Under the pieces are notes generated by a model. That model had not been told where the DNA came from. It made no database searches and saw nothing but the letters and a program-made list of their open reading frames with translations. A program made the translations under genes and the position numbers. Below are positions 3-26,627 of a stretch of DNA of 26,628 bases, piece by piece. Source of the stretch: Salpingoeca rosetta (taxonomy: Eukaryota; Protista; Choanoflagellata); the NCBI GenBank assembly GCA_033442325.1, contig JAWQFM010000034.1:641150-667777 (forward strand), given 5' to 3'. Numbering within the stretch: the stretch's first letter is position 1; each line of letters begins with the position of its first letter.

Positions 3-1893
3 CTTGCCAGAGAGGCGCGTCGTGCACAGGTGGGTGCCGTTGACGGTGAAACTGCAGTCCAGCTGGTCCACCTCCACCTCAATGTGCATCCACGGGTCGT
101 TCTTGACCATGCCCAGCACGCCAAACCACGCCGCGCCGCTTGCCGCGTCGCCGCCGCTGGGAGCCATGAGCGGGTTCACCAAATCTGTCGCCGCAGTGGC
201 CGCAGCAGTCGCGGCCGCCGCGCTCATGGTGGGTGACGTCGATGCCCCTGGCGTCGGAGACAGCGCAAACGGCGTCTCTGCAGACTCGGCTGCGCCCTCA
301 GGAGGGTTCTGCTCAAACATGTCAAACGCAAGCAATCCCAGCTCGTTCTCCTGGTAGTTGACGCTGGGGTCGCACAGCTCGCTCTCCTTCACATCCACAG
401 GCACGGCGTCGCCATCACCCACATCATACGCGCCAGCGCTGCCGAGACCTGACTCGCCAGGCACCTTGCCGGCACCGGCAGAGGCAGATGTCGAGCTCAG
501 CGGCTGCTGGCCTGCATCACTGCTCTCCGGTGCAGAGTACAGCGGGTTGGGCATCATCGTCACGTCGGATGGGCCGGCCTCCGGCTGGATTTCAAACATG
601 GGGTTGACAAAGCTGAAGTCGCCCTCCTGCGTGCCCAGGTACCCGAGCTCGACGTCGAGCGCAGAGCTCTGATCCAGCACCTCCTGCTGCTCCTTGTTGC
701 GCGTGTACAGGGTGATGATGATGTACCACACAAACATAAACACGATGCACACGCCGCTCACAATGATGGTCAGGTAGAAGGGCCAGTTGCTGTCCGTCAG
801 CGTGCTCTGTCCAAAGTCATCGTCGTCGTTGCCCGTGGTCGGCACAGGCTGCCCCGTGGTCGTCACAACGTTGACCTGGCCGTCACAATAGTCCGACAGC
901 AGGTCGGGCGTGCTGCTTGTGCCGGTCGACGTGCAGTAGTGTGCAAACAGGCAGACGGATGAGCGGTGATGGGCGAGGTCGCGGTACCGCGCAATCTCAC
1001 ACACGCACGCGCCGTGGTAGAACTCCAGCAGCGCGCCAAGCGCAGAGCACTCCGTGGCCAGCTCCCCGTGCAGGAACATGTCATCGCACAGGGCTTCTGC
1101 CTGTCGCTGCAGCGTTGCGGATTCAAACACACAGCCCATCGACGCGCGGAAGAGTAGCGGCGCCGTGGACACGGGGAAGAGGTTCGAGCCGGAAGGATCC
1201 GGGGAACCACCGTCGCTGGGCATGCTCGCCTGTCCACGCAGCCTGCACCGCGTACCATCAACGCCGTACTGGTCAGCCAGCAGCGTGCTGGTGCCGGTCA
1301 GCTGCGCGTTGTCAAAGTTGGTGTGCATGAGCAGACCATCCGAGTAGCCCTGTTGCGGGTAGAAGAAGTTCTGCCCAACCTGGTCTCCGGAGATGGGCCG
1401 GTTCCAGAAGCGCACCTCGTCCATGTGGCCCTCAAAGTCCGTGGTCTCAGTCTCGCGGCGACGGCGTGCCTCCGTTGACGACGGTTGCAGCACGGGGATG
1501 GGCTCGAGGGCACGCCCCAAGGTGAACTCGCCGTCCACGCCAAAGTGGCACGTGCGCAGGAGGCCGACAACCACGTCGGTTGCCACCACCAGCCCGGGTC
1601 GGTGCACCAGCACAAAGAGGCGGCCGTCCGTTGGGCGCCACGTCACCGTGATGTGCGCCCACAGGTTGCGGTACATGATGATGCGTGTCTTGAACACAAA
1701 CGTGCCCCAGGTGATGGTCAAGCGGCCGTCCAGCACGACGCAGTTGAACGTGATGCCGTTGGCGTAGTCCGTGTAGAACGAAAACACGACAAAGTTGCGT
1801 GTGCAGCGCCGCAAGCGGTGTGGGTTCAGCGGCACAACGTAACCACCACCATAGCCATACGTGTAGTCACCCGAGCCAGAGCCGGAGCCGGAG

Positions 1894-1936
<43 letters not shown>

Positions 1937-4900
1937 CAGACCCACTGCCGCTTCCGCTTCCGCTTCCGCTGCCAGTGTTGTCTGCTGCATACTGGTCCAA
2001 GTCGTCATGAACGTTGTCAAAGCCAGGTTTCACCCAGCCCTCTACAGCCAAGCCGCACTCGCCACCATTGCACATGCCTCCACTAGCACCGCCATCACCC
2101 GAACCAGTCCCATCACCACCAGTGCCACCACCACCCGTGCCACCACCCGTGCCATCATCGCCGCCGGACGGCTCGTATGGAACGTCGCCGCAGTCGCGCT
2201 GGGGCACAAAGCTCACAGAGGTCTGGTTGAAGGCAAACATGAAGCCGCCAGAGCCAATGCGGGTCTGGCCAGGATCAAATCGGCCTGGAATCACGTCGTG
2301 GCCAGGCACACCAAAGCGGCGAGGCAGCATCTCATTCAACCATGCCTGCGACAGCACCTCGCTGTCAAATGGCAGCGTTGTCGTCGTCGTTGTCGTTGTG
2401 GTTGTTGAGCTACTCGTTGACGTGAGCAGAGGCGTGGTCGTGGACGTGGCTGTGGTCGTGTTGCCAGCTGAACTTGTTGTGTTCACCGCAGCCGTGGTCG
2501 ATGCAAGCACCGTGCCATTGGTCGCTGGCGTTGCTGCGCTTGTGCTTGGCATTGCCGTTGCGTTGGCGGGGGTAGTTGCGTTCGACAGTGGCGTGGTCGG
2601 CGCTGGCACCGTCGTTGTGATGGCTTCACTGCAGTTGGAGCCCGTGTATGGGAATGCGCAGCTCGAGCAGTTGTCGCCCGTGAAGCGGGCATCGCAGTCG
2701 CACACAAACGCGGTGTTGTTGACCAGACGGCAGTCGCCGTGCCCGCCGCATGTGACCTCGCGCGTGCACGCCTCAACGGCGCAGGTCGGACCGGCCCAGC
2801 CGCGCTGGCACAGGCACTCGCCGACGGGAATGCTCGTGTTGGCCGCAGTACTCATGGTGCCGTTGACGCCCGTCGTGGCGGTGCTGCTGTTGGTGTTGGC
2901 TGTCTCCACGCAGGAGAGGCCATGGCCAGAGCAATCGTCGGGGCAGACAATGTCATCCGTGCAAGTCGCGCCGGTCTTGCCAAACACGCACAGGTCGCAC
3001 GTGGGGCCGGTGAAGCCAGCGTCACACGCGCACACGGCAACATCGCCCTGCGCAACGCACTCACCGTGGCTGCCGCAGCCGGCGCCGCCAGCACACGACA
3101 GCTCAACATGACAGTGGTCGCCACCGTAGCCGCTCACGCACTCACCGCAGGCAGCGCCCAGCGTCGTGTTGGAGCACATGCACACGGGCTGTTCGTTCAC
3201 AACCGCGCACGTGCCGCGAAGCGGGCCGCCGCACTGCGGGCTGCCGGGACAGATGGGCTGGCTGCAGTCTGCGCCTTGGAAGTTGGGGTCGCACAGGCAG
3301 TACGGGTTTGGTGCGTTGGCATAGTCCAGGGCGCACACGCCACGGTTGGAGCAGTCTGGCTCACCGGGGCAGTCGAGGACATCGCACGCCTCGCCGCGCC
3401 GACCCGTTGGGCACTCCCTCCACGTAAACTCCGTCTGCAGCGCTGTGGAGTTGGAGCCGCACAGGCCGTGCATGTTCTCCTGCAGCGACGCGGGAATGTC
3501 CAGGGCCGCGCTCAGCTGCCCGACATACGCCGTCACCGTCACCCGCACGCCGTTGGGCAACGACACCACGAGCTTGTGGCGCGACTGCAGGTACCACTCT
3601 GCCCTCAGCCCGCCGGGCGTGGCAAAGTCTGTCGGGTGCTCGACCGTCTGCATGGCGCCCGTGAGCGCGTCGGAGAAGAGCGCCTCCAGCCGGTTGGCAC
3701 CCGTGTCTGCGAGGTACACGGCCATGCTCTGGCTGTCGTATGACACGCCAATCATGGACGACGACACGCACGTCTCAAACGCCGTGCAGGGGCGGTGGAT
3801 GCTCTGCACGTGCATGGTGTCCGTGCGCACGAGCGTGTACGTGCCGAGGCCGCTGAACTGATACGCCGTACCAGCAAAGCTGGTGAAGTACGGGTCGCCA
3901 AACGCCGTGCACACGACGTTGCCCTCCGTGGTGGAGTTGATAAACAGGTCGGGCGCGGTGGCCACGCTGCAGTCAACACCGGTCCACCCGGGGCTGCACG
4001 ACGAGCACAGGCTGTCGCCGTTCCAGCGCGTCTCGCACATGCACTGCCCCGTGACGGAGTTGCAGCTGCCGTGGCCAGAGCAGGCCACGCCATCCACCAC
4101 ACCCTCGCACAGGGAATCGCACGTAATGCCAAAGTGCACGGCGTCGCACTCGCAGTAGTGGTTGCCGGATTGGTCTGTGGCCTCACGGCCAAACAGGCAC
4201 AGCCTGTCGCAGGTTGGCCCGATCCAATCGGTCTTCAAGCCCTCATTGCACAGCGGCCTTGCAGGCCACTCTGCCAGGTTCAGGTCATCCTCGCACAGCG
4301 TTGCAAATGCAAAGACGCTGACGAGCCCAGACGCGCTGGCGTTGTTGGCTGCACCCTGCTGCAAGCACTGCAACAAGTAGTACTCGGCCGGGTTGGGGAA
4401 CAGCGGCGCACACATGGCCTGCAGCGAGCCAATCCAGCGGTTGCAGTCCGCAAGGAACACCTGCTGCTGCGCGGGCGTGGCGCCGTAGGTTGGCAGCGAC
4501 ACGGGCCACGCGTCCACAAGCGGTGCCGTTGACGTGCTGTTCAGACCACCGCTGCCGCCACTGCCGCCACTGCTGCTTGCACTGCGCCGGCGGCGCTGCA
4601 GCAACTCCTCATCGTAGCCGGAAGCAAACTCGTCCAGAGACACCACCAGCCCAATGTCACGCGCTTCAACGTCGTCCTGCGAGTACACAAAGGTGATGGG
4701 GAGTGGAAGCGTGGAGGCGATCCACGTTGGCGCCTGTCGTGTAAAGAAGAGCAGGGTTGGCCCAACCTGGTCACCGACAACGTCGCCGCTGCCCTCGTCA
4801 AACTTCCACATGCCGGCCAGGTCTGGTGCGTACGGCGGTACGTTCTTCAGGTACGTGGAGGCAACGATGGCCGGGTTGCTGGGCCGCGTCCACAGGCGAA

Positions 4901-7900
4901 GCTCATCCACGTCGCCAACAAACGGAGCAACCGCACCCTGTCCCAGCACGGAGTCGCCAGCCATCCACACGCCAAGCAGCACCTGGCCGCCAGACTCGCA
5001 GGCGCTCGTGCCCACAAACGCAGTGAACACGCCCGATGTGTCGTCCGTCAACAGCCACACCTCAGCGGTGCCCTGGGACCGTGTCCACACGACGCTGAGC
5101 TGGTGCCACTTGTTGATCTGGAACGCCACCTCGGTCGGGTACGCCTCCGAGCCATACGAGACAATCAGCGTGTCAATCTGCCACGAGCCATCCCTGCTCA
5201 GGGCAAACGCGGTGCTGTTAGCAGAGCCAATGGGCGACAGCAGTGCCACCCGCTCGCCCTGGTGCATGCGGTGCTCCAGCACGGTGAAGGCGGCGCCTGC
5301 CAGCGTGCTCACGGTGAGTCGGGCGCCAACGGTGGGCCGCGTGTGCGCGTGCATGAGCCACAGGCCACCCGAGATGCTGAGCCGTGTGAAGGGACCGGAG
5401 TCGCCAAACGACACAGCGAGCGTGTGCAGCTTGCGGTATGCAAAGGCAACGCCGCCAACCTGCTTCGGCTTCACGCTCACCTCAAAGGTCACGGTGTCGC
5501 TGTCGTCAAACACGAGCGGCGACGAAACGAGGCCGCTGTCGTTGAGGCGGAGGGCAAAGCCGGCGTCGGTGGCCGTGGCCGGGCTGCTGCTGGAGAACGC
5601 CTCCATCTCATCCGGCAGGTCTGCCAGCGTCAGGTTTGCAAACGCCAGCGACGAGCCCGCATGGCAGGAACCAAGCAGGCCCTCCGTCCACGCGCAGGTG
5701 GTGGCGCGAGGAGCGCGCAGGAACACTTCCAGGAAGCCCTGGCGCTGCTCAATCACCAGCACGCTGCCCACATCAAACCGCAGCACTACGCTGTCCAACG
5801 ACGTTTGGGTCACGTTGTTGACGCCACTGCTGCCGCCACCACCAATTGGAATGGCAACACCCTCGGAGCGCGTGAGCACGTTGTTCACACGCACCTCAAA
5901 CGCGCCCGCAGCAACATAGGGGCTCACAAGCTGCACCTTGTCCGAACCAAATCGGACTGTCACCTCCGATACACACACTGCGCGGCCCTGCTGGCACGGC
6001 GCCAGCTGCGCGGTGACTTTGGCCAGCTCCTGGCCGCCCGTGTTGACAACACCCGCACGCTGCTGGCTCAGCACCACGCGGCCAGGTGACGGGTAGGCAA
6101 AGGAAATGCCCTCAAACGCATGCACAAGGCCGCCAGTAAAAATACCAGCAGCCACGGAGGCGCCGGCACCGCTGTTGTCGCTGCTGCTGTCGAGACGTGC
6201 AAATTCGCACTTGGCACCCAGCCAGCCCTGCGCACAGACTGAGCAGTCTGCGCCGGTCCACTGGGGATCGCAGGCGCAGGTGCCATCCACGCGACACAGG
6301 CCGTTACCGTTGCACGGCGTGGCTGCACCGCCAGGGCACGCGTCCTTGCACTCCGTGCCATAGTATCCGGGGTCGCACACGCACACGTTGAGATCCTCTG
6401 CAGAGGCGTGGCCGTTGTAGCACAGCTTGTCGCACTTGGTGCCAATGTACAGCGGGAAGTCCATGTCTGCGTAGTCGTTGCAGAAGCTCTGCAGCGGCCA
6501 CGTCTTGAGGCTCAGCACAGACTGGCAGTAGTCCGCGTACGCCACCAACGACGACATGCCTGCCGCCAGCTCGTTGGAGCGCGCAATGTCAGCGAGGCAC
6601 GCCTTGAGGTAGAAGTCAGACGTGGCCTGGCCCAGCAGTCTGCATGGCGTGTTGGCGCGGATGAACAGGCCGCAGCGGAAGTTGGCCAGGTCGTCCAGCT
6701 CTGGCGAGGAAAACTGCACAGCGCCGCCCTCGTCGCTTGGCGGGGCGTCAATGTCCGTGTACGTGAGGAACCAGACGGGGCTCGGCAGCGGCGGCTGCGG
6801 GAACACGAGCGGCGTGGCAGCGGGGCCAAGGTCCTTCGCCACAGCACCAGCGCCGTCGTCAAACTTCCACAGCGACACCAGGTCCACATCCGAGGGCTGC
6901 ACGTTGCGGTGGAAGTTCTGGCGGATGGCCGTTGAGTCGAACAGGGAGTTCTTCTCGAAGATGCGAATCTCGTCCACGCAGCCCACGAACTGCCCGCTGG
7001 CGTGGCTGCTGGTCGCGTATGCGGAGGGCCGCCACTGGCCAAACGAGAGCACGCCACCCGGGCGGAACATCTGGCTTGAGTCTGCAAAGAAGACCGACTT
7101 GGACAGCAGCGTACCTTGCTGCGTGAACATAAACAGGTTGACCACCCCCGTGGTGCGGCTCCACACGAGCGTGATGTGGTTCCACGCGTTGAGCTGCACA
7201 ACAAAGTCTGTCGTCACGACGCGGTCGCCATACACCACCTGCAGCGGGTTGGAGAGCACGACGGAGAAGGTGCGGCCGAACTGCGGCTCCTCGGGCTCGG
7301 GCTCCAGCAGCTGCTCAATCGGGTGAGGCAGACACACGTCGCGCAGCACGCGCTGGTTGATGCCGCTGATGGGCTCCGTGATGTGCGTGTACGACATGAC
7401 CGTGCCGCCGTACCGCTGCGGCTTCACCAAGAACTCAATCATGACAAACTTGCTCTTGAAGGCGTTCACCATGGGCGGCGAGTAGATGCCAGAGTCTGCA
7501 AAGCACACGGCGTACCCGTTGGTCGGGTTGTCAATGGGCTCGTCCAGCCAGTCCTTCTCCAAGATGTCGAGGATGTCCTCCTCATCCAGCTCCGTTGGCG
7601 ACTCGGGCATCCAGTCGTTGGTGCACTGGCTGCCGTCGCCACCGCACACACCGCACTGGTCCACGTAGGACACAAATGTCACGCCACGCAGGCGACACGC
7701 CTGCTCGTACGCCTGCACCACCGCACAGCTGCACGCGCTGCTGCACGCAGCGTAGCTGACGGCACACGCGCGCACGTACGGCTCTGGGTCAACCACGCCG
7801 TGGCACGCGGAGTAGCGCCCGCGCGGGGCAGCGAGCACATCGCAATTCTCGCCATGCTCGCTCGCAGGTGGCTGTGCTGGCAGGCACTGGCGTGACGGCG

Positions 7901-10900
7901 TCGCGGGCGTCTCGGGAACACGCCACGACGAGGCAAGCGCCGTGGTCTGCGTCAGGTTGCCCGTGTCCTGCACCGCTGTGTTGTCGGAGGTGAACAGCAC
8001 CTGCGTGCCGCTGAAATGGCCGCACAGGCCGCACAGGTTGTTGCGGTACGCGGTTGGCGCGTTGACCTCCAGCAGGTCGCCGTTGAAGGTGATGGAGACG
8101 TCAAGCACAAGCAGCTGCACCGTCACCTTCGAGTACACGCGAGACACGCGCACGCGGCTGGTGACAATGGGCAGCGCGTCGTCCTCAACCACCTCGCCGT
8201 TCATGACCACAAGGCCGCCCAGCCGCACGTCCACCGTGACAGCGGGCTCCTGCGTGCTGCCGTCGGAGATGGCGGGCAGGATGACGCGCACCTCATCGGC
8301 AGCGGGGTACGCTGACGTCGATGCGGCTGCCAGGGTCGCGTGCACCTGGAACTCGCTGCCATCGCAGTTGGGGCCGCCAGAGGCCACGACAAACCTGCCG
8401 CGCCCGCAGAAGCTGAAGGGCAGGCCGTCAAACGTGGTCATGTGCGCGCCGTACAAGAGGCAGCTGCTCGTGCCATCCGGCAGGTCATCGTCCCTGCACG
8501 TGGAGCCGTCGCCGCCACACACGCCGCAGCGGTCAATGACGGAGGTGTATGGCACCTGGATGGAATCGCACAGGCTCTCAAAGGCCCGGAACGGGTCGAC
8601 GCATGCTTTGCCAATGTCCTTGGCGTCTGTTGCACAGGCCATGCTCAGGCACGCGCGGTAGAACGGCTCCGGGTCAAGCACGGCGGCACAGGAGCCATAC
8701 ACAGGTGCGGGGCTGTTGAGCAGCGCACTGCACTGCTCCTCTGCGCGGGCACGGTTAGCGGGGAAGGCGACGCAAGGGTCGCGCGGCGGCTCGGGCCCAT
8801 CCGTGCACGTGGTGCTGGCGCTGGTGAGGCGGCGAAGCAGCGGCGGCGTGGCTTGGTTTACACCAAAGCTCCACATGGAGTTGCGGTTGCTCGGCGCAAA
8901 CTCGTCTGCAAGGCCGTTCATGTTCCCGCACAGGCCGCACACGCGCGACTGCAGCGAGCGCGGCACAAACACGCGGAACGTGTTGAAGTGCGACCACTCC
9001 ACATGCACGCCCGTTGCCTGGTGCACAACGCGCAGCACGCCGCTGTCACCGTCGCCTGTGTGGTGCACGGACACGCCGTGCCTGTTCAGGTAGGGCGCTG
9101 TCAGCACGGTGTCGTCTGCCTTGTCGTCAATGTCGTCGCCAGCAAGCGACACAACACCGCCGCCCGTGATGTGCACGAGAGGCGATGCGCCAAAGCGAAC
9201 AGCGAGCACGGGGGTGGCTGGGTCGCTGCCGCGCGTCACCACGGTGATGTCAAACTCGTGTTGCGAGCAGTCACTCACCAGGTTGTACTCGCACTCCCCG
9301 GCAAAGTCGAGGCTCTCGCCATCAAAGGTCACGTAGGACGAGGACGCGAACACGGTGCAGGAGGCCAAGCCATCTGCGCAGGTTGAGTCGTCACCGCCAC
9401 ATACGCCGCACACGTCGCGCGCGGACGAGATGCCCGTGGCTCCGGCAAGCGCACATGCACCCTCGTAGGACGCAATGATGTCGCAGGCATCCAGGAGGGG
9501 GAGGGCGTCCGTGGCGTTGCCAAAGGTGGCGGCCACGGCGCTGGTGGCGTTGTGCGGCCAGGCGGACCACGCACATGCCGCTTCCAGGCATGCCTGGTAG
9601 TATGTCTGTGGAGCGACGGTGGCGTGGCATCCGGCGAGCGAACCGAGCGGGTCGACGAGCACGTGGCACAGTGCTTCGGCGGCGGAAAGCGCGCCGGCGT
9701 TGCCAGCGCACTCGGACGGCGGCAGCACGGTGGCGTTGAAGGTCTGGTTGGTGAACTGCGGGTCGCCAAACGGCGCCAGCAGGCCCGTGTCGTGCACCTG
9801 CCAGCCAAGCACGCTGGTGTAGGACGTGGAATCGTCGCCAATGTGGCCGTTGTTGTTGCCGGCGATGCCGCGCGTGCTCACAAAGAAGCTCTCTGGGGCG
9901 CGCACCCACGCCGTCGCCGCAATCAGGTCAATGTCCATCTCAAACAGGCCCTCGTACAGGCTGACAAACAGGCGAAAAGAGCCGTGAATGTTCCGCAAGT
10001 AGACGGTGAAGCGTAGGCCAGAGAGCCTGTAGCCTACCAGGACGCGGCCGTTGATGCTGACGCGTGTGTGCACGAGGTCAACGTGGATGGTGACCGTGTT
10101 GGAGATGACAATGGCAATGCCGCGGAGGCACGCGGGCGAGTAGCGGCTGCTTGTTGTCGCCCAGGTGCAGGTACCCACGCTGCCGTACACGCGCAAGGGG
10201 TAGCCGTTGTACAGGCTCTCCACCAGCAAGTAGTCGTAGACGTTCGTGCGCCAGATGGTGGCGCCATCAAATGTGCGGTACACCACGCGGCCAGATCCGC
10301 CAAACACGCTAAAGCGGCGCACCGACGGCGCAACGCAGCCCGTCACGGGGCTGCAGTAGCGCCAGGGTGCGCGGCAGTGCCGTTCAAGCACACGAATCAC
10401 AGACCGTGCGGCAGCAGTGGGAGTTGACGCAGCGCACACGCGGCGCAGGCACGACTGGTAGTAGAAGTCGACGTTGACGCCAAACGTGCCGCTGCAGGAC
10501 GCAAAGAGCGTGGTGCGCACAACCGCACAGTAGGACGCGGCCAGCTGGTACGCGTACGCGTTGCCTGCACAGGGGCTCGTGGGCAGCGGCGGAAGCACGC
10601 ACACGGCGCTGGCAGACGCCGTGAACAGCGCGGCCTGGAACTCGCTCTGCAGTGCACCCGCAACCGCGGTGGTGTCAGCAGACGCGGCCAGACCACACGC
10701 ACCGCACAGGCGATCTCGGTACGAGGGCGCAATAAAGAGCTCGTGGTGAGTGCCGTACCACGTGAACACCACTTGCTGGTTCACGCCCACCACCTCGATG
10801 CGGCCGTTGAGGTTGCGGACGAGCGTCTCCTGCTGGTCGACGACCGTCCAGCCGCCCGTCAGGAACGCGCCGTCAACGTCCACGGTCATGTTTGCGTGCA

Positions 10901-13816: not shown

Positions 13817-13851
<35 letters not shown>

Positions 13852-18600: not shown

Positions 18601-21600
18601 GCCGTCTTGAAGTCGTCAATCGCAGAGCCAGTAAAGTCGCCGCACAGGCCACACATGCGGCCATGCAGGGTTGGCGGTGCCATGACCTGGATGATGGAGC
18701 CGCGCGCACGAACCTGCACCTGATTCAGCATCTCAATGACCAGGGTGTCGTCCACGAGCCAGGTAAGAGTCGTGCCGTCCTTGTAGAGAACGAGCGAGGA
18801 CTCGGAACGGGAGACGCGCGCGTTGTCAATGTACACCGCACCGTTGCGCAACTCAACCAAGTGCCGGCCCTGTGTGCGCAAGGCTAATGCATACGTTGCC
18901 AGGACGGGGTTGGGAATGATTTGCACCTCAAACGAGCTTTCCTCGCAGTCCTTTGCCAAAATGTACGAGCACGTGCCGGCGTAATCGTACGCACTGCCGT
19001 CAAAGGTGACAAAGTGCGCGCCACCGAGTGTGGAGCAGGTTGCGAGTTCTTGCGCGCAGGAGGAGCCGTCGCCAAACGCAACCCCGCAGCGGTCAATGAT
19101 GGGCGGCTGCGGCGCGCGCCCGCGGTCCTTGCACAGCACGTCGTACTGGCGAATCGCCGACGTGGCGTGCAGCGGGTAGCACATGTCAGCAAGACATGCC
19201 TCATAAAACGGCTCAGGGTTGAGCAAAGAGTGGCAGGAAGCAAATGGGCCGTCTGTGTCCACAATGACGGCGCAGCGGCGGCGGCCTTCCTCAATGACCT
19301 GCGCATCTGCGTCAGCGCATGGGTCAACGGGCGTTGGCGGCACGGGCTCATGGTAGCACACGCCCTCCCTCGAAGCAAACAGCGTCGACGGCGCGGACGT
19401 GACGTTGACCACGGCCCAGCTCAGCCCAAACTTGTACGCGTTTGTGGTGAGCACACCGGCGCTGGTGACGAGGTCGTTGGAGGTGACGTTGTCGTACTTG
19501 CCGACAAGACCACACACGCGGTTGGAGAAGCGGTCCGGGACCCACACGGAGAGGATAGCGTCCTCAGTGTACTCAATCTCAATACCGTTGCTCATGGTCA
19601 CAACCAGGGTGCCCTGCAGGGTGCGGGTCACGGTGGTGCCGCCCCTGAGCAGCAGCGGAAGCTTGGTCTGCAGCTGGCCGTCCACAAGCACATCACCAGT
19701 GAACTGCAACTCCACGACCGGCGATCCGTGTGACGTGATGCCAACGCCAAAAGTGGAAATGCCGGCGTTGGTCACGTTGCGGTTACGCACGTGGATCTCA
19801 AACTCGTTGTACAGGCAGTCCTTGGCAAACACGTAGTCACACGTGCCGGAGAAGCTAAACACAGTTTTGTCCAGGGTCACGTAGTGGGGGTCACCAAACA
19901 CGGTGGACACGCTGTACGTCTCCAGGCACGACTCGCCGTTGCCAAAGCACAAGCCACAGCGGTCAATGACGCTGCTTGCCTCCACGGGGTCTGGGCTGCT
20001 CTTGAGGCAGCGATCCTCGTAGGCAGCGTACACGCCACACGCCTTCTCGGCGCCGCCGGTGCAGTAGTCGCTGATGCACGCATCAACGTACGCGGACGGG
20101 CTGGCCCAGACGTGGCAGGCGGCATACGGGCCGACGTCGCTGGCTAGTGCGGCGCAGTAGTCCTCGGCCAGCGCCTGTAGCGTGGCGTTGTTGAGACAGG
20201 GACTGTCGCGCTCCAACACACGCGGCGAGCACATGGCGCCGGAAGGGCCAAGGAAGAGCGCGTCGGTCTCGGGCGAGTGCCAGGTAAGGCCGGCCTGCTC
20301 GAAGGTGCACGTGCCGTTGACGGTGCACCCGGGCACGTTGCTGCCGTACGTGCTGACGTCGTCCAGGGCGGTGTTGCACAGGCCGCACAGGACGCTGGAG
20401 AGACGCACGTGCGCGCTGATGGCGGTCTGGCCCGAGAACGGGTTCCACGAAACAACCAAGCCCTCGCGCTGGGCGGTGACAATGAGGTCAAAGCCGTCGC
20501 TGCGCACGACAATGCCGCCATCCAGCACGCTCGGCACCTCGGTGACCTCAATGCCGTCGAGGAACACGCGCGGGCCGTCCAGCTCCAGCGCCTGCTCGCC
20601 AATGCGCACAAGCAGGCGCGTAAACGCGTCCGAGCCCTCGGGCTTGTAGCCGTGGATGGCAAACGAGCCGTGGGCGCAGTCCTCGGCCAGCACGTACGAG
20701 CACTGGCCGTGGAACGTCTGCAGGTCGTTGGAGACGGTGGCCACGTGGGAGCCGAGCACGGCGCACTGGAGGTTGGAGGAGGCGCACGTGGACCCGTCAC
20801 CGAAGCACACGCCGCACTCGTCCAGCACCGTCTCGATGGCAGTGAAGCCAGACTCAATGCACAGGTCCTCCAGCGCCGTGATGCTGGCGCACGCAGCAGC
20901 TGCGATTGCCGCATCGACGCTGTTTGTGATCTCATCGCCGGGATTTGCTGCCAGCGCCGTGGCGTTGCCAATGGCGATGCAGTAGTCGTACACGCACGAT
21001 GCAAACAATGTTTGGCTCTGCATGCCGACTTCGCCCACGCATGAGGCGTACGGGCCAGCGGTGTCGCGCAGCACGTGGCAGTAGTGTTGGGCCACCAGCA
21101 GCAGTTCCGGCGAGGAGTCGCACGGGTTGCTCGGGCGCGGCTCGACAGCGACGGTTTCGTTTGCAGATGCGCACTGCTGTGGGGCGGCCCAAGCTGTGCC
21201 GTAGCTCCAGGCAGCCGTGACGTTGTCCGAAGCAACACTAACATTGGCGGTGGCGCCCGGCAGGCGGAGCCCCTCTGCAGAGCCGCAGAGGCCACAGGAG
21301 CGTGACAGCAGGGACGCGTGGGCGTGAACGGCGACAGCACCGCGGCCATCGGACGAGACGCTCAGGAACGGCACGGAAACGGACAGGCCCTCCGATGTGA
21401 CGTCGATCAACAGGCCGCCGCCAGCCGCGGAGCGGTAGGGAAAGCTGACCACGAAGCCAGCCTTATCGCGGGCAAGCCCACTGACAAAGAGGACCTCATC
21501 GCCGCGGGACAGGATGGCGCTGGCGCTGACGCGGGCACCGTTGACGAGGACGCGCGTCTCTTGGAGCAGCGGCGCGACAGCCTGACGCGTCGAGTTGAGG

Positions 21601-24600
21601 AGCGTGGCTAGAACCCAGTCTGCACGGACACGGTCCAGCTCAGCCGGTACGGTCATAGTGCTGGGCAGGATTTCAAGCCACGTTGTTGGCCGTTGCGGAT
21701 CTGGTGTCATCTCAACCCGCACGGTGGGCGCGTCCTGGCCACAGCGCTGCAGGTACACGGCAAAGGCTCCAAACTGGCAGTCACGCAGGAGGGCATATGC
21801 CTGCTCGCCCGCAAACAGGAACGGGTCCGCAGCGAAGGGCTGAACGAAGGAAGCGCCATGCAGCGAGCACGAGCGCCACTCCTGTGCACAGGCGGAGCCG
21901 TCGCCAAAGCACACACCACAGGCGTCTCTGACAGAGCCGAGATCCGGCACAAGCTGTGCACACGCGCGCTCGTACTCCGACACAGCGGCGCAGGCAAGGC
22001 CCTGCCGCCAGGTATCAACGGCATCCGCCGGGATACTGGGAGGTGCCGCGGCGCAGAAGGCGCTCAGGCACGAGCGATAGTACGCGGCTGGGTCGAGCAC
22101 GGCAAGGCACGGGCCGAGCGAACCGCCAGGGGCGGTCATGCGGTCGCAGTACGCCTCAGCAGCCGCACGGGTGGTGCTTGTTGCGGTGTCGCACGGGTGG
22201 GTGGTGGTTGCAGGTGGGGCAACGCAGGCTTCATCTGGAGGCTGAAGCGCAGAATCTGGGCGCACCGTCACCTGCCGTGTTGAGGAAGACGAAGCGTCAC
22301 CGCTATCGCCGCTCACATCCGCAACATCAAGCAGTGAGGACACACCGAGGGACGCGGGCCAGCACATGCCGACGATGTTGGCGGTGCTGGCGGTGCTGGT
22401 GTGTATGCGCACACTGGTTGCACCAGCAGAGATGGAGATGCCAAACGCCGGCACCACAAGCGTAACCAGCGACGCGGACGAGCGGAACAGGCGTGTGTCA
22501 TCTGAGGGGTTGACAATGTGCACGGGGTCCGTGGGCGCAAACGCTCTTGAGAGTGGCTGGCCATCGGCATCACCAGACGCCTCGTGGCTCACGACCGTGC
22601 CGTCGCTGTGAATCTCAAGATGCCAGCCGTTGTGGCGAGCAATCGCCAGCACATACGCGCCAGACGCCTGGCGTTTGACCGTGACCATGAAGCTGCGTGG
22701 GTCCTCGCGGTCGCCCACGAGCAGCAACTCACAGCCCGTTGCCGTGCTCAGCAGCGAATCGGCCGCAAAGGGAACAAGCGTGTGGGTGTCGAGCAGGCTG
22801 CACTGGAGCTGATCCTGGGGCCCACAGTCCTCGCCGGTGCCATAGCACACGCCGCATCGATCCCGCACAGAGGACACGTTGTACAGCAGCCCACCAGATC
22901 GGGCAGCACATGCCCGCTCGTACAGGGTGAGCAGCTGACACGCCTCCCGCCTTGCCTCTGCTTGGCTTTCGGCGAAACAGGCGCGGGCAACGCACAGGTT
23001 ATGATAGGCTGCTGGCTCCTCCAGCGAGAAGCAGCTGTCCTTGTACGGGCTGACCTCTGACACGGGGTCAAGGTCAGCACACAGCATCGCAGCAGAGGTG
23101 CATGACGTGTTGGCCGGGGGAGGGAGCACCACAGGGTCCTCGGGAACAGAGCAACCACCGGTGACAGATGAGGCCAGGAGCTGCGAGGCCCCGGCAGCGT
23201 CCAGTAGCGTTGTGCTTCCACACGCGGCGGCGTTGCCTGCGACAACGGCGCTGGTTGCCATCACGCGCACCATGGAGGTAGAGGACGCAGCAACGGCCAC
23301 CACAACGCGAGCAAGCACGCCCACGGGCTGCCTGATAAAGTCGGTGTTGTTTGAGTACCTCTCAGTCCCGGGTGCACTGCCGCTGTATACGGTAAGCAGC
23401 AGCTCCGTCGAAGTGCGCTCCAGCAGAGCGTGCTGCAACCTGACAGGGAAGCCCGTGGTCGTGCGGCCGTTCACCACGGCAACGTTGGGCTGCCGTGGAT
23501 CAAGTGTGAAGGCAGCACTCGTGTGGGACGCCGTGTGGTTCACGACCATGTGCACCACGCCAACGACTGGCGACACGGACACGGAAACACCTGCAGCACG
23601 CAGCAGGGTCAGGTCACACACATCGTTCTGCTCGCCAAGCGCGAGCGCGGTGCGATCGGAGGTGGCATCAGGGCGGAAGGTCAGCAGGGACGCCTGCGTC
23701 GCCGAGCACTCGTTGGGCAGGCTGCAGCTCGTGCCGTCACCGCGGCACACGCCGCAGCGATCAAACACCGAGGCAGCACCGCGCACACCTGCGGAGAAGC
23801 AGAGCGCCTCCACGTTGCCGAGGAAGCCGCACGCCGTCTCACGTGCCAGGGCAGGGGTGGAGGCCAGGCACACGCGGGCAACGCACGACGCGTACGCCCT
23901 GTTGAGGTCAAGCGCCTGCTCGCAGGGGGCGTACTGACCAGACGCGAGCACCTGACACTCCAGCTGTGCGCGCATCGCAGCCTCAGGGCTGGCACACCCT
24001 GGTGCCGGGTCTTCCGGCCCGGTGCACGTCGTCTGCTGGAACAGCACGCTGTCACCCAAACGCTGCTGGCTGGCCACGACGCTTTGTGGGAGATCACCAT
24101 CGCCCGCGAGCTCGCTCGCAGTGCACAATCCAGTCACGTTGAGGCTCACCGAGGTCCTTGGACCAGGGCTGTTGAGAAGTGAGTCTCCAGCATGCAACAG
24201 CACGTTGGTGTCCATGCGAACAATGTCCCTGTGCACGGACAGTGACCAGCCAGTTTGTGCAGAGATGCGTCCCTTGACGAGGCCATGAAGCAGCGTGACC
24301 GCCGTCGGCGAGGTGAGCACCAGCTGCCCAAAGCCAGCGCTGGCACCGACACGCATGGGCCAGGTGGAAGCGCCGGTGTCCAGCGCCGTTCCGTTCACCC
24401 AGACACCAACGGCGCCATCGTCACCCACGCGCAGCTCAACGACAGCACCCGAATCATCAGACACAGCGAGACCGCGCCCGCCCTCCTGGAACTGCACAAC
24501 AATGCTGGATGAGCTCACGGACGTGACGTTCTTCGATGTGGTCGTGTTTCCAACTGTTTGTTCGACCGTCGTCACTTGTGTCTCGACGCGAGAGACACGC

Positions 24601-26627
24601 ACGGCCTCATACGTGCACGAGCCAAGGAAGTCGTGAGTCGCGCCATCAAAGGTGGTGAGGGCATCAATCGTGGGAGACAGGGAGCACGTTGCGCCAGGGA
24701 AGGCGGTTGGATCCTGCACATCGCAGCCTGACCCATCGCCAAAGCACACACCACACACATCCCGGGTCTCGGTCGGCAGCTGCACGCCGCACTGGCGGTC
24801 AAAGGTGGAGATGACATCACACGCAGCCTCAGCACCGGCGTCAGCGTCGCTCGCGCTGCAGAAGGCCTCCATGCATGACACGTGAAACTCGGCCGCTTGA
24901 AGCGTCGTCGTGGGGCACTGAGATGCGAGCGCGGCGAGCGTGGCATTGTCTGAAAGCGCGTGACAGAAAGTTTGCGCGGCTTCCACAGTCGTGGCAGCAG
25001 CGCCCTCGCAGGTAGCGCGGGGCGTGACCGGCGGCTCTGGCGCCGTTTCGCACGCCGCATCCGCGCCAATGGCGTTGTTGGTGGCAGGCACCATGTGCGA
25101 GGCCAGGTTGGCGCTGGTGAACTGCGCCGGCGTCAGGGTGCACGCACCGCAGCTGCCAGAAGCGCTTCCCACGCCCTCGCTCGGACCGCTAACCTCCACG
25201 TCCGACCGGGAAATGGTCACACGCAGAGGCAGGGCAGGAACAGCGAGCGACAACTCCCCTGCAAGCGTTGAAATGAGCGTGCGGATACCGCGAGTGGCGC
25301 CGAGGTACGCGCCCGAGCCCACAACGACCGGCATGCCGTTCACTTGCACAGTTACAGCCGCGCCCGCCTGTTGTTGCTGCTGGGCGGAGAACATGCTTGC
25401 AGGCTCAACCACCACTGTGTCGTTCTGGAACCGAACGGCAATGGCAACCACCGCGCTGTCTTCGGAGAACTTGGCCTCCACGCTAAAGTCTGTGCCGGCA
25501 TCCTCCGCAACGCGCTCGGCGCAGGCACCCAACAAGCGGTAGAAGCACACGGGGTACGCATACTGAGCCGACGAGCTGGCCAGCGTCTTGAAGAGCCCAC
25601 GGTACCTGTACCGACACGTACTCCATGCACGGCACGTCTGCACCTGCCACGCATCACTGGACGTCGCCTGCGACAGCAACGCGGTTGCATCGAGGCAGTC
25701 GCCACAAGCGTCCTGCACGCTGCCGTCCAGGTGGACGCCGGCGTCAACACAGGCCTGTTCATACGCGCGCAGTGCTGTGCATGGGACCTGGGAATCGCAC
25801 GGCGCCGCCACGCACGCGTCGTAAAACGGTTGCGGATCAACGGCAACATGGCAGGGGGAGAACAGCCCAAAGCGCGAGGAAATGAGCTGGCACGCGGTGC
25901 TGTCATCGCCCGTGTCTGCGGCACCGGAAGAGGTGCAGGCATCAGGTGGGAACTCGGGGTCTGAGCACGTGCGGTTGGCAAACTTGAGCAGGTGGCTCGA
26001 GTACCCAACCAGCTGACGCGCCCCGAAAAAGTAGGCATCGCTGGTGTCAGTCACGCTGAGCTGCGTGTCGTCGCCCGCAACGCCGTTGAAGTTGCCGCAG
26101 AGGCCGCACAATGCGCCCCCACGCCACTGCGCACCATTCGCCTGCACAGACACCACGCCATCCGGCACACGCCACAGCACACGTACCCCAAGCCGGGCAG
26201 AGACAATCTCAAAGCCCCAAAGGCGGCGATACATCGTGACTTCGTTGCTGGTGGTGAAGGGGAAGTGGGGGATCACGTCGGGGCCCAGGTACGCCTGCCA
26301 GTCCTCATCCGCACTGGCCAGGCTTGAGTACAACGACACAGGATCTTCTGAGAAGGAGCGGAGCGCAACGCCAACGACACACCGCTGAGAGCCGTCACCA
26401 CAGGCCGCAAGCGTCGCCTGCACCTCAAACGCGTCGGACTCGCAGTCCTTGGCGACGACGTAGGTGCACATGCCGGGGAACTGCCACACGTGCTCATCAA
26501 AGGTTTCAATGAGCATGCCGTCGCGCACGGTGCAGGTCGCATCTGCCGCGCACGTGGAACCGTCACCGTCGCACACGCCACAGCGATCCACCACAGCGGC
26601 GTCGCGCGTGTGGCCCTCGGCGATGCA
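3..26627 (-). CDS. Giant single-pass membrane glycoprotein with ~23 VWD, C8, 3 LamG/pentraxin-like and EGF-like domains (FCGBP/zonadhesin/mucin-like); partial at both ends; three apparent 1-nt frameshifts
   Basis: Four minus-strand frame segments join into one continuous domain series. The frame is open at the 5' edge (CIAEGHTRDAAVVDRCGVC) and the 3' edge (...HLCTTRLSGK). It contains recurrent TFDG, GDPH and CGLCGNF VWD signatures, C8 cysteine patterns, EGF motifs and one TM helix. Confidence 0.9.
705..785 (-). other. Single transmembrane helix
   Basis: WPFYLTIIVSGVCIVFMFVWYIIITLY is followed by TRNK (basic inside) and preceded by acidic NDDDD. Confidence 0.88.
1290..2250 (-). other. LamG/pentraxin-like domain 3, split by Gly-rich and Ser-Gly inserts
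   Basis: LAVEGWVKPG...NLWAHITVTWRP...FEGHMDEVRFWNRPIS...LLMHTNFD. Confidence 0.75.
1869..1973 (-). repeat. Coding hexamer repeat encoding G(SG)17
   Basis: Plus-strand (GCCAGA)n and (CCGCTT)n runs read as 35 alternating Gly/Ser codons on the minus strand, using several synonymous codons. Confidence 0.9.
2376..2620 (-). repeat. Thr/Ser-rich mucin-like stalk
   Basis: Translates as ITTTVPAPTTPLSNATTPANAT...TSSSTTTTTTTTTT, with several N-x-T sequons. Confidence 0.8.
2628..3410 (-). other. Cluster of about five tenascin-like/laminin-like EGF repeats
   Basis: CPGEPDCSNRGVC...CLCDPNFQGADC; CGSHGEC...CACDAGFTGPTC; CSGHG...CLCQRGWAGPTC; CGGHGDC...CDCDARFTGDNC. Further EGF pairs lie at ~3966-4225 and ~6195-6450. 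Confidence 0.85.
4700..5565 (-). other. LamG/pentraxin-like domain 2
   Basis: VTFEVSVKP...NKWHQLSVVW...FVGDVDELRLW...AGMWKFDEGSG. Confidence 0.8.
6765..7520 (-). other. LamG/pentraxin-like (ConA fold) domain 1
   Basis: FVMIEFLVKP...NAWNHITLVWSR...FVGCVDEIRIF...VSLWKFDDGAG matches the Laminin_G_3/pentraxin pattern. Confidence 0.8.
7620..15570 (-). other. Array of nine VWD-C8 modules (VWD13-21)
   Basis: VWD starts fall near 15515, 14650, 13630, 12720, 11900, 11090, 10310, 9360 and 8460, with motifs such as RTFSGYENAFSGICDYVVAKDC, RVCGLCGNMNG and NLCGLCGHFSG. Boundaries are approximate. Confidence 0.75.
13821..13847. repeat. (GCT)9 microsatellite encoding poly-Ser within a C8 loop insert
   Basis: Nine perfect GCT units read SSTTTN-S9-DTIGSGGD on the minus strand. 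Confidence 0.85.
15680..16759 (-). CDS. Segment 3: GDPH-type VWD12 (repeat copy 2), Pro-rich linker, start of a C8 domain
   Basis: ORF 15590..16795 is a paralog of segment 2 and ends in C8-like CFALADAQGPLATCLETVDPTDFISSCRDAVC. Confidence 0.85.
15855..17590. repeat. Direct tandem duplication, two copies of ~0.88 kb
   Basis: 17141-17589 matches 16260-16708 (offset 881) with 3 mismatches by eye. The remainder aligns at offset 887 after a 6-nt indel and is clearly more diverged. Confidence 0.93.
16760..17878 (-). CDS. Segment 2: end of VWD10, Thr/Pro linker, GDPH-type VWD11 plus short Cys-rich helical module (repeat copy 1)
   Basis: ORF 16675..17850 contains TVKVDVP...LEGLCG, which completes VWD10, followed by CTSAGDPHFTTFDGARFDFYGVGEFYLL. 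Confidence 0.85.
17879..26627 (-). CDS. Segment 1: ten tandem VWD(-C8) modules (VWD1-10)
   Basis: This is the 2925-aa ORF in the track (e.g. ETFDEHVWQFPGMCTYVVAKDC, GALCGLCGNFNG, FGDPHYVTLD, HFVTFDGSAYDYAGTCSYILAKDC). The frame continues upstream of the called GTG to the window edge. Domain-like sequence is lost after FSDGSTL at ~17880. Confidence 0.9.

What the first reader, a model, noticed from the sequence alone, without database searches (positions are those of the whole stretch)
3..26627. Giant (>8,800 aa) membrane-tethered VWD-array protein with at least 23 VWD domains
Seen: one colinear reading with ~23 VWD domains, three LamG domains, ~9 EGF repeats, a TM helix and a tail, still open at both edges. 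Known: vWF and gel-forming mucins have 3-4 VWD domains, zonadhesin about 4-5 full ones, and FCGBP about 12-13. Inference: this is an unusually large, probably undescribed adhesion, glycocalyx or matrix receptor, likely from a holozoan protist. Automated annotation would fragment it, because over half is absent from the ORF track and it has three frameshifts.
Basis: partly seen in the sequence, partly recalled or inferred. Interest (0 to 1): 0.8.

Follow-up and report, generated by a model that had tools for sequence, protein, structure and literature searches.

The report
Giant membrane-anchored VWD-C8 array protein
The whole window is one very long gene on the reverse strand for a cell-surface protein of about 8,900 amino acids or more, built from some 22 mucin-type "D" modules plus a membrane anchor. 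It is an uncharacterised relative of animal mucus and adhesion proteins in a single-celled relative of animals, and it is one of a family rather than a one-off.

Summary
Four stop-free stretches (2,936, 412, 402 and 5,269 aa) tile 26627 to 3. They carry 22 recognisable VWD domains plus one degenerate slot, about 20 C8 domains, three LamG_3 domains, about nine EGFs, a Thr-rich stalk, a (Ser-Gly)17 tract, the only TM helix and a tail of at least 230 aa. Both window edges are open.

The three frame breaks cluster around a recent 0.88-kb tandem duplication. Two of them fall inside a VWD and a C8 with no profile columns missing, so they are indels, not introns. Contigs from other runs of the same species read two breaks in frame. 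No run supports the window's join at the third. The gene is therefore probably intact and the reference locally unreliable.

Stranded RNA reads show low-level transcription of the minus strand.

No TIL, cystine knot or FCGBP_N domain was found; modules end in a CGVCxGDGxxC motif. No database protein from this locus turned up. Uncharacterised colinear relatives exist in environmental contigs. A sponge has TIL-less VWD-C8 arrays, and earlier scan notes report paralogues in this genome.

Best reading: a type I glycocalyx or adhesion filament with conserved NPxF/NPxY tail motifs. I class it as a new variant of a known kind, of moderate interest.

The parts
17820..26627 (-). Piece A, 2,936 aa, open at the window's right edge. 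It starts in the tail of an upstream C8/CGVC linker. It then holds nine VWD-C8-CGVCxGDGxxC modules (one with an unrecognisable VWD slot at 23238-23705) and the first part of VWD 10.
17804..17907 (-). Frame break 1 (A to B), inside VWD 10. The VWD profile runs 1-110 in frame A and 97-148 in frame B. Compared with a contig of run X1, the window has a 9-nt tandem duplication (17804-17821) and lacks 7 nt after 17875. With that variant, A and B read through in frame.
15861..17605 (-). Recent tandem duplication of a ~0.88-kb cassette: 15861-16724 against 16749-17605, 89% identical with 300 nt at 99%. Each copy encodes a GDPH-type VWD, a small 4-Cys domain (weak C8-3_MUC4 hit) and a Pro/Thr linker. 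The pair is nested between VWD 10 and the next C8.
16745..16775 (-). Frame break 2 (B to C), at the border of the two cassette copies. The window reads CTGCGGATCGC where the sister copy's protein (DRLRDRT) implies one more base. No contig or read of four runs bridges 16759|16760. Reads of all four runs carry a different left flank that reads in frame as DRLR-DRTDGNGTTT.
15636..15681 (-). Frame break 3 (C to D), inside a C8. The C8 profile runs 13-51 in frame C and 50-94 in frame D. A contig of run X16 is 8 nt shorter here and gives a continuous, normal C8.
7590..15809 (-). First half of piece D: nine further VWD-C8-linker modules. VWDs lie at 15072-15512, 14184-14651, 13158-13628, 12300-12722, 11478-11906, 10659-11090, 9846-10280 (cysteine-poor), 8895-9359 and 7989-8465.
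2619..7589 (-). Membrane-proximal region, in gene order: LamG_3 (6951-7226), EGFs (6234-6413), diverged VWD (5661-6128), LamG_3 (4863-5243), EGFs (3975-4250), VWD with GDPY (3423-3911), then a run of teneurin-type EGFs (2619-3386).
786..2618 (-). Stalk: a Thr/Ser/Pro-rich stretch (2370-2618), a third LamG_3 carrying a (Ser-Gly)17 tract (1872-1973), and a juxtamembrane Cys-rich domain (915-1133) conserved in the L002 relative.
702..785 (-). The only transmembrane-helix candidate in the whole reading (D5009-5036), followed by basic residues.
3..701 (-). Cytoplasmic tail, open at the left edge. The motifs SFVNPMF (594-605 holds NPMF) and NPLY (537-548) are conserved in the L002 relative. The last ~25 aa begin a beta-rich domain that in L002 continues for about 370 aa more.

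Best explanation
The window is the body of one intronless, minus-strand gene for a type I membrane protein. About 8,900 aa lie in the window, and the total is probably over 9,300 aa.

Shown:
- An extracellular chain of at least 21 VWD-C8 'D-assembly' modules that lack TIL/E and mostly end in a CGVCxGDGxxC mini-motif.
- A membrane-proximal block of LamG_3, EGF and two more VWDs.
- A short Thr-rich stretch and a Ser-Gly tract.
- One TM helix.
- A tail with two NPx[FY] motifs conserved in a relative.

Inferred:
- The disulfide-rich modules form a long beads-on-a-string filament projecting from the cell surface, on the order of 0.1 micrometre. This estimate rests on my general knowledge of D-assembly size.
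- The filament acts as a glycocalyx or adhesion element that binds extracellular ligands through its VWD and LamG domains.
- The four VWDs with an Asp-Pro motif (GDPH three times, GDPY once) may self-cleave yet stay attached, as described for FCGBP.
- The tail motifs recruit PTB-domain adaptors for endocytosis or cytoskeletal coupling.

The three frame breaks in the window are most likely local errors or strain differences of the reference around a tandemly duplicated cassette. The real gene may hold more copies of that cassette.
For: - Open frames and codon bias.
- Domain content.
- A module model (pLDDT 76.5) matches solved VWF, MUC2, MUC5AC and FCGBP D assemblies at E 1e-17.
- Breaks 1 and 3 lie inside a VWD and a C8 with no profile columns missing. 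Both are in frame in the contigs of runs X1 and X16.
- Break 2 is a join that none of four runs supports, with an in-frame alternative in the reads.
- Contig depth over the cassette is 2.5-5 times that of the flanks.
- Stranded RNA reads lie almost all with the first mate on +, which implies a minus-strand RNA. No CT..AC joints were seen in 13800-19700.
- Relative L002 is colinear with D58-5266, including the TM helix, SFVNPMF and NPLY.
- Relative L003 is colinear with A1102-2925 at 36% identity.
- There is a single TM candidate.
Against: - The window as given does carry three frame breaks. A contig of run X1 matches the window's version of 15636-15687, so that version may be a real allele.
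- No single read or contig links pieces A, B, C and D.
- RNA depth is low and is zero across 15770-16360 and near break 1.
- The runs differ from the window and from each other at many sites, so I could not separate strain, allele and assembly effects.
- The start, the signal peptide and the stop lie outside the window.
- No functional data exist. The ligand, self-cleavage and adaptor binding are all inferred.
Confidence: 0.65

Rival explanations
1. It is a pseudogene in the sequenced strain. A once-intact giant gene was disabled by three real indels around the duplicated cassette, and what is transcribed is a dead or truncated message.
For: The breaks are in the window. They are complex changes rather than simple homopolymer slips: a 9-nt duplication plus a 7-nt loss, and a divergent 46-nt patch. 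A contig of X1 matches the window's version at 15636-15687.
Against: Downstream of the breaks, 5,269 codons stay open with strong codon bias (GC3 0.80). In-frame versions exist in other runs for two breaks, and no run supports the third join. RNA reads at 17680-17725 carry the letters of the contig that holds the in-frame version of break 1.
Confidence: 0.15
2. It is two or more adjacent genes: for example a secreted VWD-C8 array (piece A) and a separate membrane protein (piece D), with the duplicated cassettes in between being a third gene or remnants.
For: No read or contig spans all the pieces. RNA depth drops to zero at 15770-16360.
Against: The breaks fall inside domains that continue across them. 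No stop, start context, promoter-sized gap or non-coding stretch separates the pieces. Piece A has no TM helix or stop of its own. Relative L002 carries the array and the anchor on one contig in one frame.
Confidence: 0.1
3. It is a choanoflagellate orthologue of a known animal protein (FCGBP, a gel-forming mucin, zonadhesin or MUC4) and does the same job.
For: The best named hits are FCGBP-like proteins, zonadhesin, alpha-tectorin and mucins. The fold matches their D assemblies.
Against: No TIL, FCGBP_N, MAM, NIDO/AMOP, CysD or cystine knot was found. Identity to the animal proteins is 20-33% and limited to single modules covering 6-24% of the query. It has a TM helix and an NPxY tail, unlike FCGBP and the gel-forming mucins. 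GDPH occurs in only 3 of 22 VWDs.
Confidence: 0.05

Closest known systems
FCGBP (IgGFc-binding protein) and FCGBP-like proteins of vertebrates
   Same: A long tandem array of VWD-C8 modules, 13-17 per protein in the models fetched here. Some VWDs carry GDPH. The best named sequence hits and D-assembly structures match.
   Different: FCGBP modules are VWD-C8-TIL and it has an FCGBP_N head (Pfam lists for its hits). As I know it from the literature, it is secreted. The window protein has no TIL. It ends its modules with CGVCxGDGxxC. It has 22 or more VWDs of which only 3 carry GDPH. It adds LamG/EGF and is membrane-anchored.
Zonadhesin
   Same: A type I membrane protein with a VWD array, EGF near the membrane and a cytoplasmic tail (architecture from my knowledge of the family). 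It appears among the hits.
   Different: Zonadhesin has MAM domains, a mucin domain and VWD-C8-TIL units, about 4-5 of them. None of MAM or TIL was found here.
Gel-forming mucins and von Willebrand factor (D assemblies)
   Same: VWD plus C8 fold. The conserved GLCG motif lies at the end of the VWD. The structural match is E 1e-17 with TM about 0.68.
   Different: There is no TIL/E, no long PTS domain, no CysD, no VWC and no cystine knot, and the module number is far larger. Lang et al. 2016 (PMC4948705) use the lack of TIL to exclude the choanoflagellate proteins from the mucins.
MUC4 / SUSD2-type membrane-proximal VWD
   Same: A VWD with an Asp-Pro motif followed by EGFs and a TM helix. The duplicated cassettes have a weak C8-3_MUC4 hit (E 0.011).
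   Different: No NIDO or AMOP. The hit is below Pfam's cut-off. The motif in the membrane-proximal VWD is GDPY, not GDPH.
Uncharacterised TIL-less VWD-C8 arrays: environmental contigs L002 (P0101), L003 (P0093), P0057 and P0011; sponge proteins P0001-P0003 (the sponge assignment rests on the P0096 cluster, whose representative comes from another ENA contig and which holds Corticium candelabrum XP_062520253.1)
   Same: L002 is colinear over D58-5266 with the same order: array, LamG/EGF/VWD, TM helix, SFVNPMF/NPLY tail. L003 is 36% identical over 1,800 aa of piece A. P0001 has 14 VWD plus 14 C8 without TIL.
   Different: Identity is only 25-36%. None of them is characterised or named. The sponge array is followed by cEGF/TSP_3/TSP_C ORFs instead of LamG/TM.

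Membership tests
VWD-C8 D-assembly superfamily (VWF, mucins, FCGBP) | VWD domain (PF00094) present above Pfam's cut-off | tested here: met
   Pfam E values from 1e-104 to 1e-9 in all five pieces. 20 domains found by own HMM.
VWD-C8 D-assembly superfamily (VWF, mucins, FCGBP) | C8 domain (PF08742) after the VWD | tested here: met
   Pfam C8 in pieces A, C and D. 19 full units, one split unit and one partial unit by own HMM.
VWD-C8 D-assembly superfamily (VWF, mucins, FCGBP) | Predicted fold matches solved D assemblies | tested here: met
   Model pLDDT 76.5. Foldseek top hits are VWF, MUC5AC, MUC2 and FCGBP, with E from 1e-17 to 1e-10.
VWD-C8 D-assembly superfamily (VWF, mucins, FCGBP) | TIL (PF01826) and E module completing each D assembly | tested here: not met
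   No TIL hit at E <= 0.01-0.05 in any piece. The module ends in CGVCxGDGxxC, which is modelled at low confidence.
FCGBP | N-terminal FCGBP_N domain (PF17517) | tested here: inconclusive
   Not found in the window, but the N-terminus lies outside the window.
FCGBP | GDPH self-cleavage motif in most VWDs | tested here: not met
   GDPH occurs in 3 VWDs (A2245, B142, C64) and GDPY in one (D3971).
FCGBP | Secreted, no membrane anchor | tested here: not met
   One strong TM candidate at D5009-5036, followed by a tail conserved in a relative.
Gel-forming mucins | Long central PTS domain and C-terminal cystine knot | tested here: not met
   Only a Thr/Ser/Pro-rich stretch of about 80 aa. No CTCK or VWC hit. 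The L002 relative's C-terminus has none either.
Zonadhesin | MAM domains N-terminal to the VWD array | tested here: inconclusive
   No MAM in the window. The N-terminus was not available.
MUC4 / SUSD2 type | NIDO-AMOP-VWD unit | tested here: not met
   No NIDO or AMOP hit. Only a weak C8-3_MUC4 hit at E 0.011.
TIL-less VWD-C8-CGVCxGDG arrays of choanoflagellate type (unnamed) | Colinear homologues with the same module type and the same LamG/EGF/VWD-TM-NPxY C-terminus | tested here: met
   tblastn of D58-4415 and D4694-5266 onto L002 in order. The TM helix and both tail motifs align. The P0057 unit shares 30% identity over 653 aa.

The most novel reading that the evidence does not exclude
This gene and its relatives (paralogues in the same genome, environmental choanoflagellate-like contigs, sponge arrays) form a pre-animal family of membrane-tethered D-assembly filaments. 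They would represent the ancestral state from which the secreted VWD-C8-TIL proteins of animals (FCGBP, gel-forming mucins, VWF) arose. In this reading the NPxF/NPxY tail, and a cytoplasmic LamG-like domain, couple a filament over 0.1 micrometre long to the cell interior, making it a surface receptor for prey or matrix rather than passive mucus.
Probability: 0.25. Interest if true: 0.65.

Novelty: new variant of a known kind. Interest (0 to 1): 0.45.

Why it matters
VWD-C8 assemblies are the building blocks of animal mucus, of clotting (VWF) and of sperm-egg adhesion. Where they came from is only sketched in the literature: Lang et al. 2016 left the choanoflagellate proteins as 'data not shown' and as possible false positives.

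A complete, transcribed, membrane-anchored array of 22 or more modules in a genetically tractable choanoflagellate gives a concrete pre-animal member to study. It shows that very long D-module arrays and membrane tethering do not need TIL.

It also flags a place where the reference assembly is unreliable and where the gene appears to be missing from protein databases.

It is not a new kind of system. The function is still inferred, and related giant genes exist elsewhere.

Tried and rejected
- **Introns as the cause of the frame changes: rejected.** The VWD and C8 profile alignments continue across breaks 1 and 3 without missing columns. No CT..AC joints were seen. The two 'joints' reported (14444 to 16511 and 14444 to 17392, GT..CG, with 11 foreign letters between) are 22-nt cross-matches of reads from elsewhere.
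- **Plus-strand ORFs of up to 421 aa: rejected.** They are antisense by-products of a 64% GC coding region.
- **Looking for the locus's own annotated protein: nothing found.** Three word searches covering 1,615-9,220 aa and the exhaustive profile search gave no protein more than 36% identical. A model longer than 9,220 aa would escape the word searches but not the profile search.
- **Loose-end sequences of the reads: not in the window.** They come from extra cassette copies or from paralogues.
- **The VWD slot at A975-1170: no VWD signal** with the own HMM, hhalign or Pfam.
- **Weak Pfam hits (S4, Vpu, DSL, Antig_Caf1): treated as noise.**
- **Not possible here:** the N-terminus, signal peptide and stop could not be reached, because no tool reads beyond the window for this genome.


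Full report
**What is in the sequence**

The finding is real, but it lies on the minus strand. A six-frame scan that also counts frames running off the ends gives four overlapping stop-free stretches that tile the window:
- A, 26627-17820 (2,936 aa)
- B, 17913-16678 (412 aa)
- C, 16798-15593 (402 aa)
- D, 15809-3 (5,269 aa)

The ORF lister shows only part of this, because it omits ORFs that run off an end. GC is 0.70-0.80 at third codon positions against about 0.53 at second positions in these frames, up to the left edge. The plus-strand ORFs are antisense by-products of a 64% GC coding region.

**Domain content**

- Pfam finds VWD and C8 in every piece. In the last 2,600 aa it also finds Laminin_G_3 and teneurin-type EGF. 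It finds no TIL.
- An HMM iterated on the protein's own VWDs finds 20 domains.
- A further full module at D1844-2150 is recovered by profile-profile comparison at 99.5% probability. Its VWD has lost most of its cysteines.
- The stretch D3228-3383 scores 23.1 bits for VWD when scanned alone (cut-off 22.9). It aligns to a clear VWD of relative P0057.
- That makes 22 recognisable VWDs. The slot at A975-1170 sits between two good C8 units but gives no VWD signal with any method.
- C8-plus-linker units number 19 full, one split by a frame break, and one partial at the very start of the window. At least one more module must therefore lie upstream.
- Modules are 20-29% identical to one another, so the array is old.
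- Most modules end in CGVCxGDGxxC.
- A model of one module (pLDDT 76.5) matches solved D assemblies of VWF, MUC5AC, MUC2 and FCGBP at E down to 1.9e-17. The linker is modelled at low confidence.

After the array, in gene order, come:
- LamG_3, EGFs and the diverged VWD
- LamG_3, EGFs and a VWD with GDPY
- a run of about five full plus three half EGFs
- a Thr/Ser/Pro-rich stretch
- a third LamG_3 interrupted by (Ser-Gly)17
- a juxtamembrane Cys-rich domain
- the only TM candidate of the whole reading (D5009-5036, window 702-785)
- a tail of about 233 aa that is still open at the edge

**The three frame breaks**

All three breaks lie within 2.3 kb, around the only DNA-level repeat of the window. 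This repeat is a tandem duplication, 15861-16724 against 16749-17605. It is 89% identical overall and 99% over 300 nt, with a period of 881-887. Pieces B and C are these two copies. Each copy encodes a GDPH-type VWD, a small four-cysteine domain with a weak C8-3_MUC4 hit, and a Pro/Thr linker. The pair is nested between VWD 10 and the next C8.

- **Break 1** lies inside VWD 10. Profile positions 1-110 are read in frame A and 97-148 in frame B.
- **Break 3** lies inside a C8. Positions 13-51 are read in frame C and 50-94 in frame D.
- Because no profile columns are missing at either break, these are small indels, not introns.

I laid reads and contigs of four runs of the same species on 13800-19700.
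- A 945-nt contig of run X1 lacks one copy of a 9-nt tandem duplicate at 17804 and has 7 extra letters after 17875. Applying this in a script joins A and B in frame and gives a normal VWD.
- An 800-nt contig of run X16 is 8 nt shorter across 15645-15681. Applying it joins C and D in frame and gives a normal C8.
- **Break 2:** at 16759|16760 no read or contig of any run bridges the window's join. Reads of all four runs (21 in X21) carry another left flank that continues in frame as DRLR-DRTDGNGTTT. The window reads CTGCGGATCGC where the sister copy's protein (DRLRDRT) implies one more base.
- Contig depth over parts of the cassette is 2.5-5 times that of the flanks.
- Further loose ends, such as the one at 17562, encode a different Pro/Thr linker.

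My reading is that the reference is collapsed or mis-joined in this repeat and that the true gene holds at least one more cassette. This is inference.

One caveat applies. The runs differ from the window and from each other at scattered sites, and one X1 contig supports the window's version of 15636-15687. Real allelic or strain variation is therefore also present, and a broken allele in the reference strain cannot be excluded.

**Expression**

The two raw-read RNA runs give 58 and 202 reads on the 5.9 kb. Nearly all have the first mate on +, which for the usual stranded libraries means a minus-strand RNA. No splice-type joints (CT..AC) were seen. Depth is low and patchy, and it is zero at 15770-16360. 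Transcription of the gene is therefore shown, but a single full-length transcript is not.

**Relatives**

No protein from this locus was found anywhere. Word searches with D1-2700, D2740-5269 and all of A (candidate lengths 1,615-9,220 aa) gave none. Neither did an exhaustive profile search of 1.84 billion representatives. Nothing fetched is more than 36% identical to any piece. Either the locus is unannotated or its product is not in these collections; I cannot tell which.

The profile search found 6,156 proteins at E <= 0.001.

The closest relatives are unnamed:
- **L002** (17.4-kb JGI contig carrying P0101) is colinear with D58-4415 and D4694-5266. It has the same order of array, LamG/EGF/VWD, juxtamembrane Cys domain, TM helix and tail. 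The motifs SFVNPMF and NPLY align exactly, and its frame runs about 370 aa beyond the point where the window ends.
- **L003** (P0093) is 36% identical to A1102-2925.
- **P0057** shares the LamG / Cys domain / EGF / VWD unit at 30% identity over 653 aa.
- **P0001-P0003** have 14 VWD and 14 C8 each without TIL. P0001 is directly preceded by a 3,074-aa VWD/C8 ORF and followed by cEGF, TSP_3 and TSP_C ORFs. The cluster of the related hit P0096, whose representative comes from another ENA contig, includes a Corticium candelabrum protein, so these are probably sponge genes.

Named hits are FCGBP-like proteins, zonadhesin, alpha-tectorin, mucins, VWF, otogelin and hemocytin. All of these carry TIL, and they match 6-24% of the query at 20-33% identity.

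Among all 312 proteins fetched, the largest VWD count is 17, in FCGBP-like models of Hemiscyllium ocellatum (7,014 aa) and Sorex araneus (6,961 aa). The window's reading therefore has the most VWDs of any single predicted protein seen here. Split gene models, such as the sponge one, may hide equals.

**Literature**

Full-text searches found one relevant statement. Lang et al. 2016 (PMC4948705) note that:
- choanoflagellates have VWD together with C8 but without TIL;
- their mucin predictor hit a protein in S. rosetta and M. brevicollis ('data not shown');
- they regarded it as a likely false positive, pending better assemblies.

No paper describing this architecture was found.

Earlier notes of this scan identify the genome as a choanoflagellate, probably S. 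rosetta. They list two other VWD-rich giant genes in it and the same CGVC motif. I did not test the species assignment.

**How it most likely works**

Shown: this is a single-pass protein. Its disulfide-rich array must be extracellular, so it is type I, with the NPx[FY] tail inside the cell.

Inferred from what is known of D assemblies and of the other domains:
- The modules form a long, stiffened filament.
- LamG_3 and VWD domains supply binding surfaces.
- The Thr-rich and Ser-Gly stretches are glycosylated spacers.
- The Asp-Pro motifs in four VWDs may self-cleave while the parts stay attached, as reported for FCGBP (PMC8267560 and PMC10880436; abstracts seen).
- The conserved FxNPxF and NPxY motifs bind PTB-domain adaptors.
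- The post-TM part of the L002 relative looks LamG_3-like (Pfam E 0.006; atlas score 0.96). This is a lead only.

I commit to a glycocalyx or adhesion filament that is linked to the cell interior. I am about 65% confident in the gene-level reading and much less confident about any specific ligand.

**Verdict**

- It is a new variant of a known kind (VWD-array surface proteins), uncharacterised and apparently absent from protein databases.
- Interest is moderate.

Noticed in passing
L002:3732-3734 and L002:12801-12803: The environmental relative's giant frame is interrupted by two in-frame TAG codons, one of them inside a conserved VWD motif (GLCGQFTN*IELDFDG). All three called ORFs share one frame. 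This could be sequencing error, a polymorphism or stop-codon read-through.
   Followed up: partly
window 17804-17821: A perfect 9-nt tandem duplicate (GCCCTCAGC twice, giving LRA-LRA in the protein). It is present in the window but single in a contig of another run of the same species.
   Followed up: yes
window 13800-19700: Runs of the same species differ from the window and from each other at clustered sites (for example 14454-14513, 14762-15420, 17143-17176, 17680-17725 and 19268-19293). This suggests several haplotypes or strains, or contigs that switch between near-identical copies.
   Followed up: partly
L001:1-18681: A probable sponge locus. A 3,074-aa VWD/C8 ORF is followed after 98 nt by a 4,226-aa ORF with 14 VWD and 14 C8 and no TIL. 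Small ORFs with cEGF, TSP_3 and TSP_C come next. This may be one gene that joins a VWD-C8 array of about 24 modules to a thrombospondin-type C-terminus.
   Followed up: no
L002:15300-16595 (the homologous part begins at window 3-80): The part after the TM helix and the NPxY motifs looks like a Laminin_G_3 / ConA-like domain (Pfam E 0.006; atlas feature score 0.96). It would be cytoplasmic, which is unusual for this fold.
   Followed up: partly
window 1872-1973: A (Ser-Gly)17 tract encoded by a 6-nt repeat of 12 copies, inside the third LamG region. It was already noted by another first-stage note as a possible glycosaminoglycan attachment site.
   Followed up: no
window 915-1133 and 6590-6640: A Cys-rich, probably helical domain with the motif FY..C..(D/E)IA occurs after LamG 1 and again just before the TM helix. 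It is conserved in P0057 and L002. No Pfam family matches it.
   Followed up: partly
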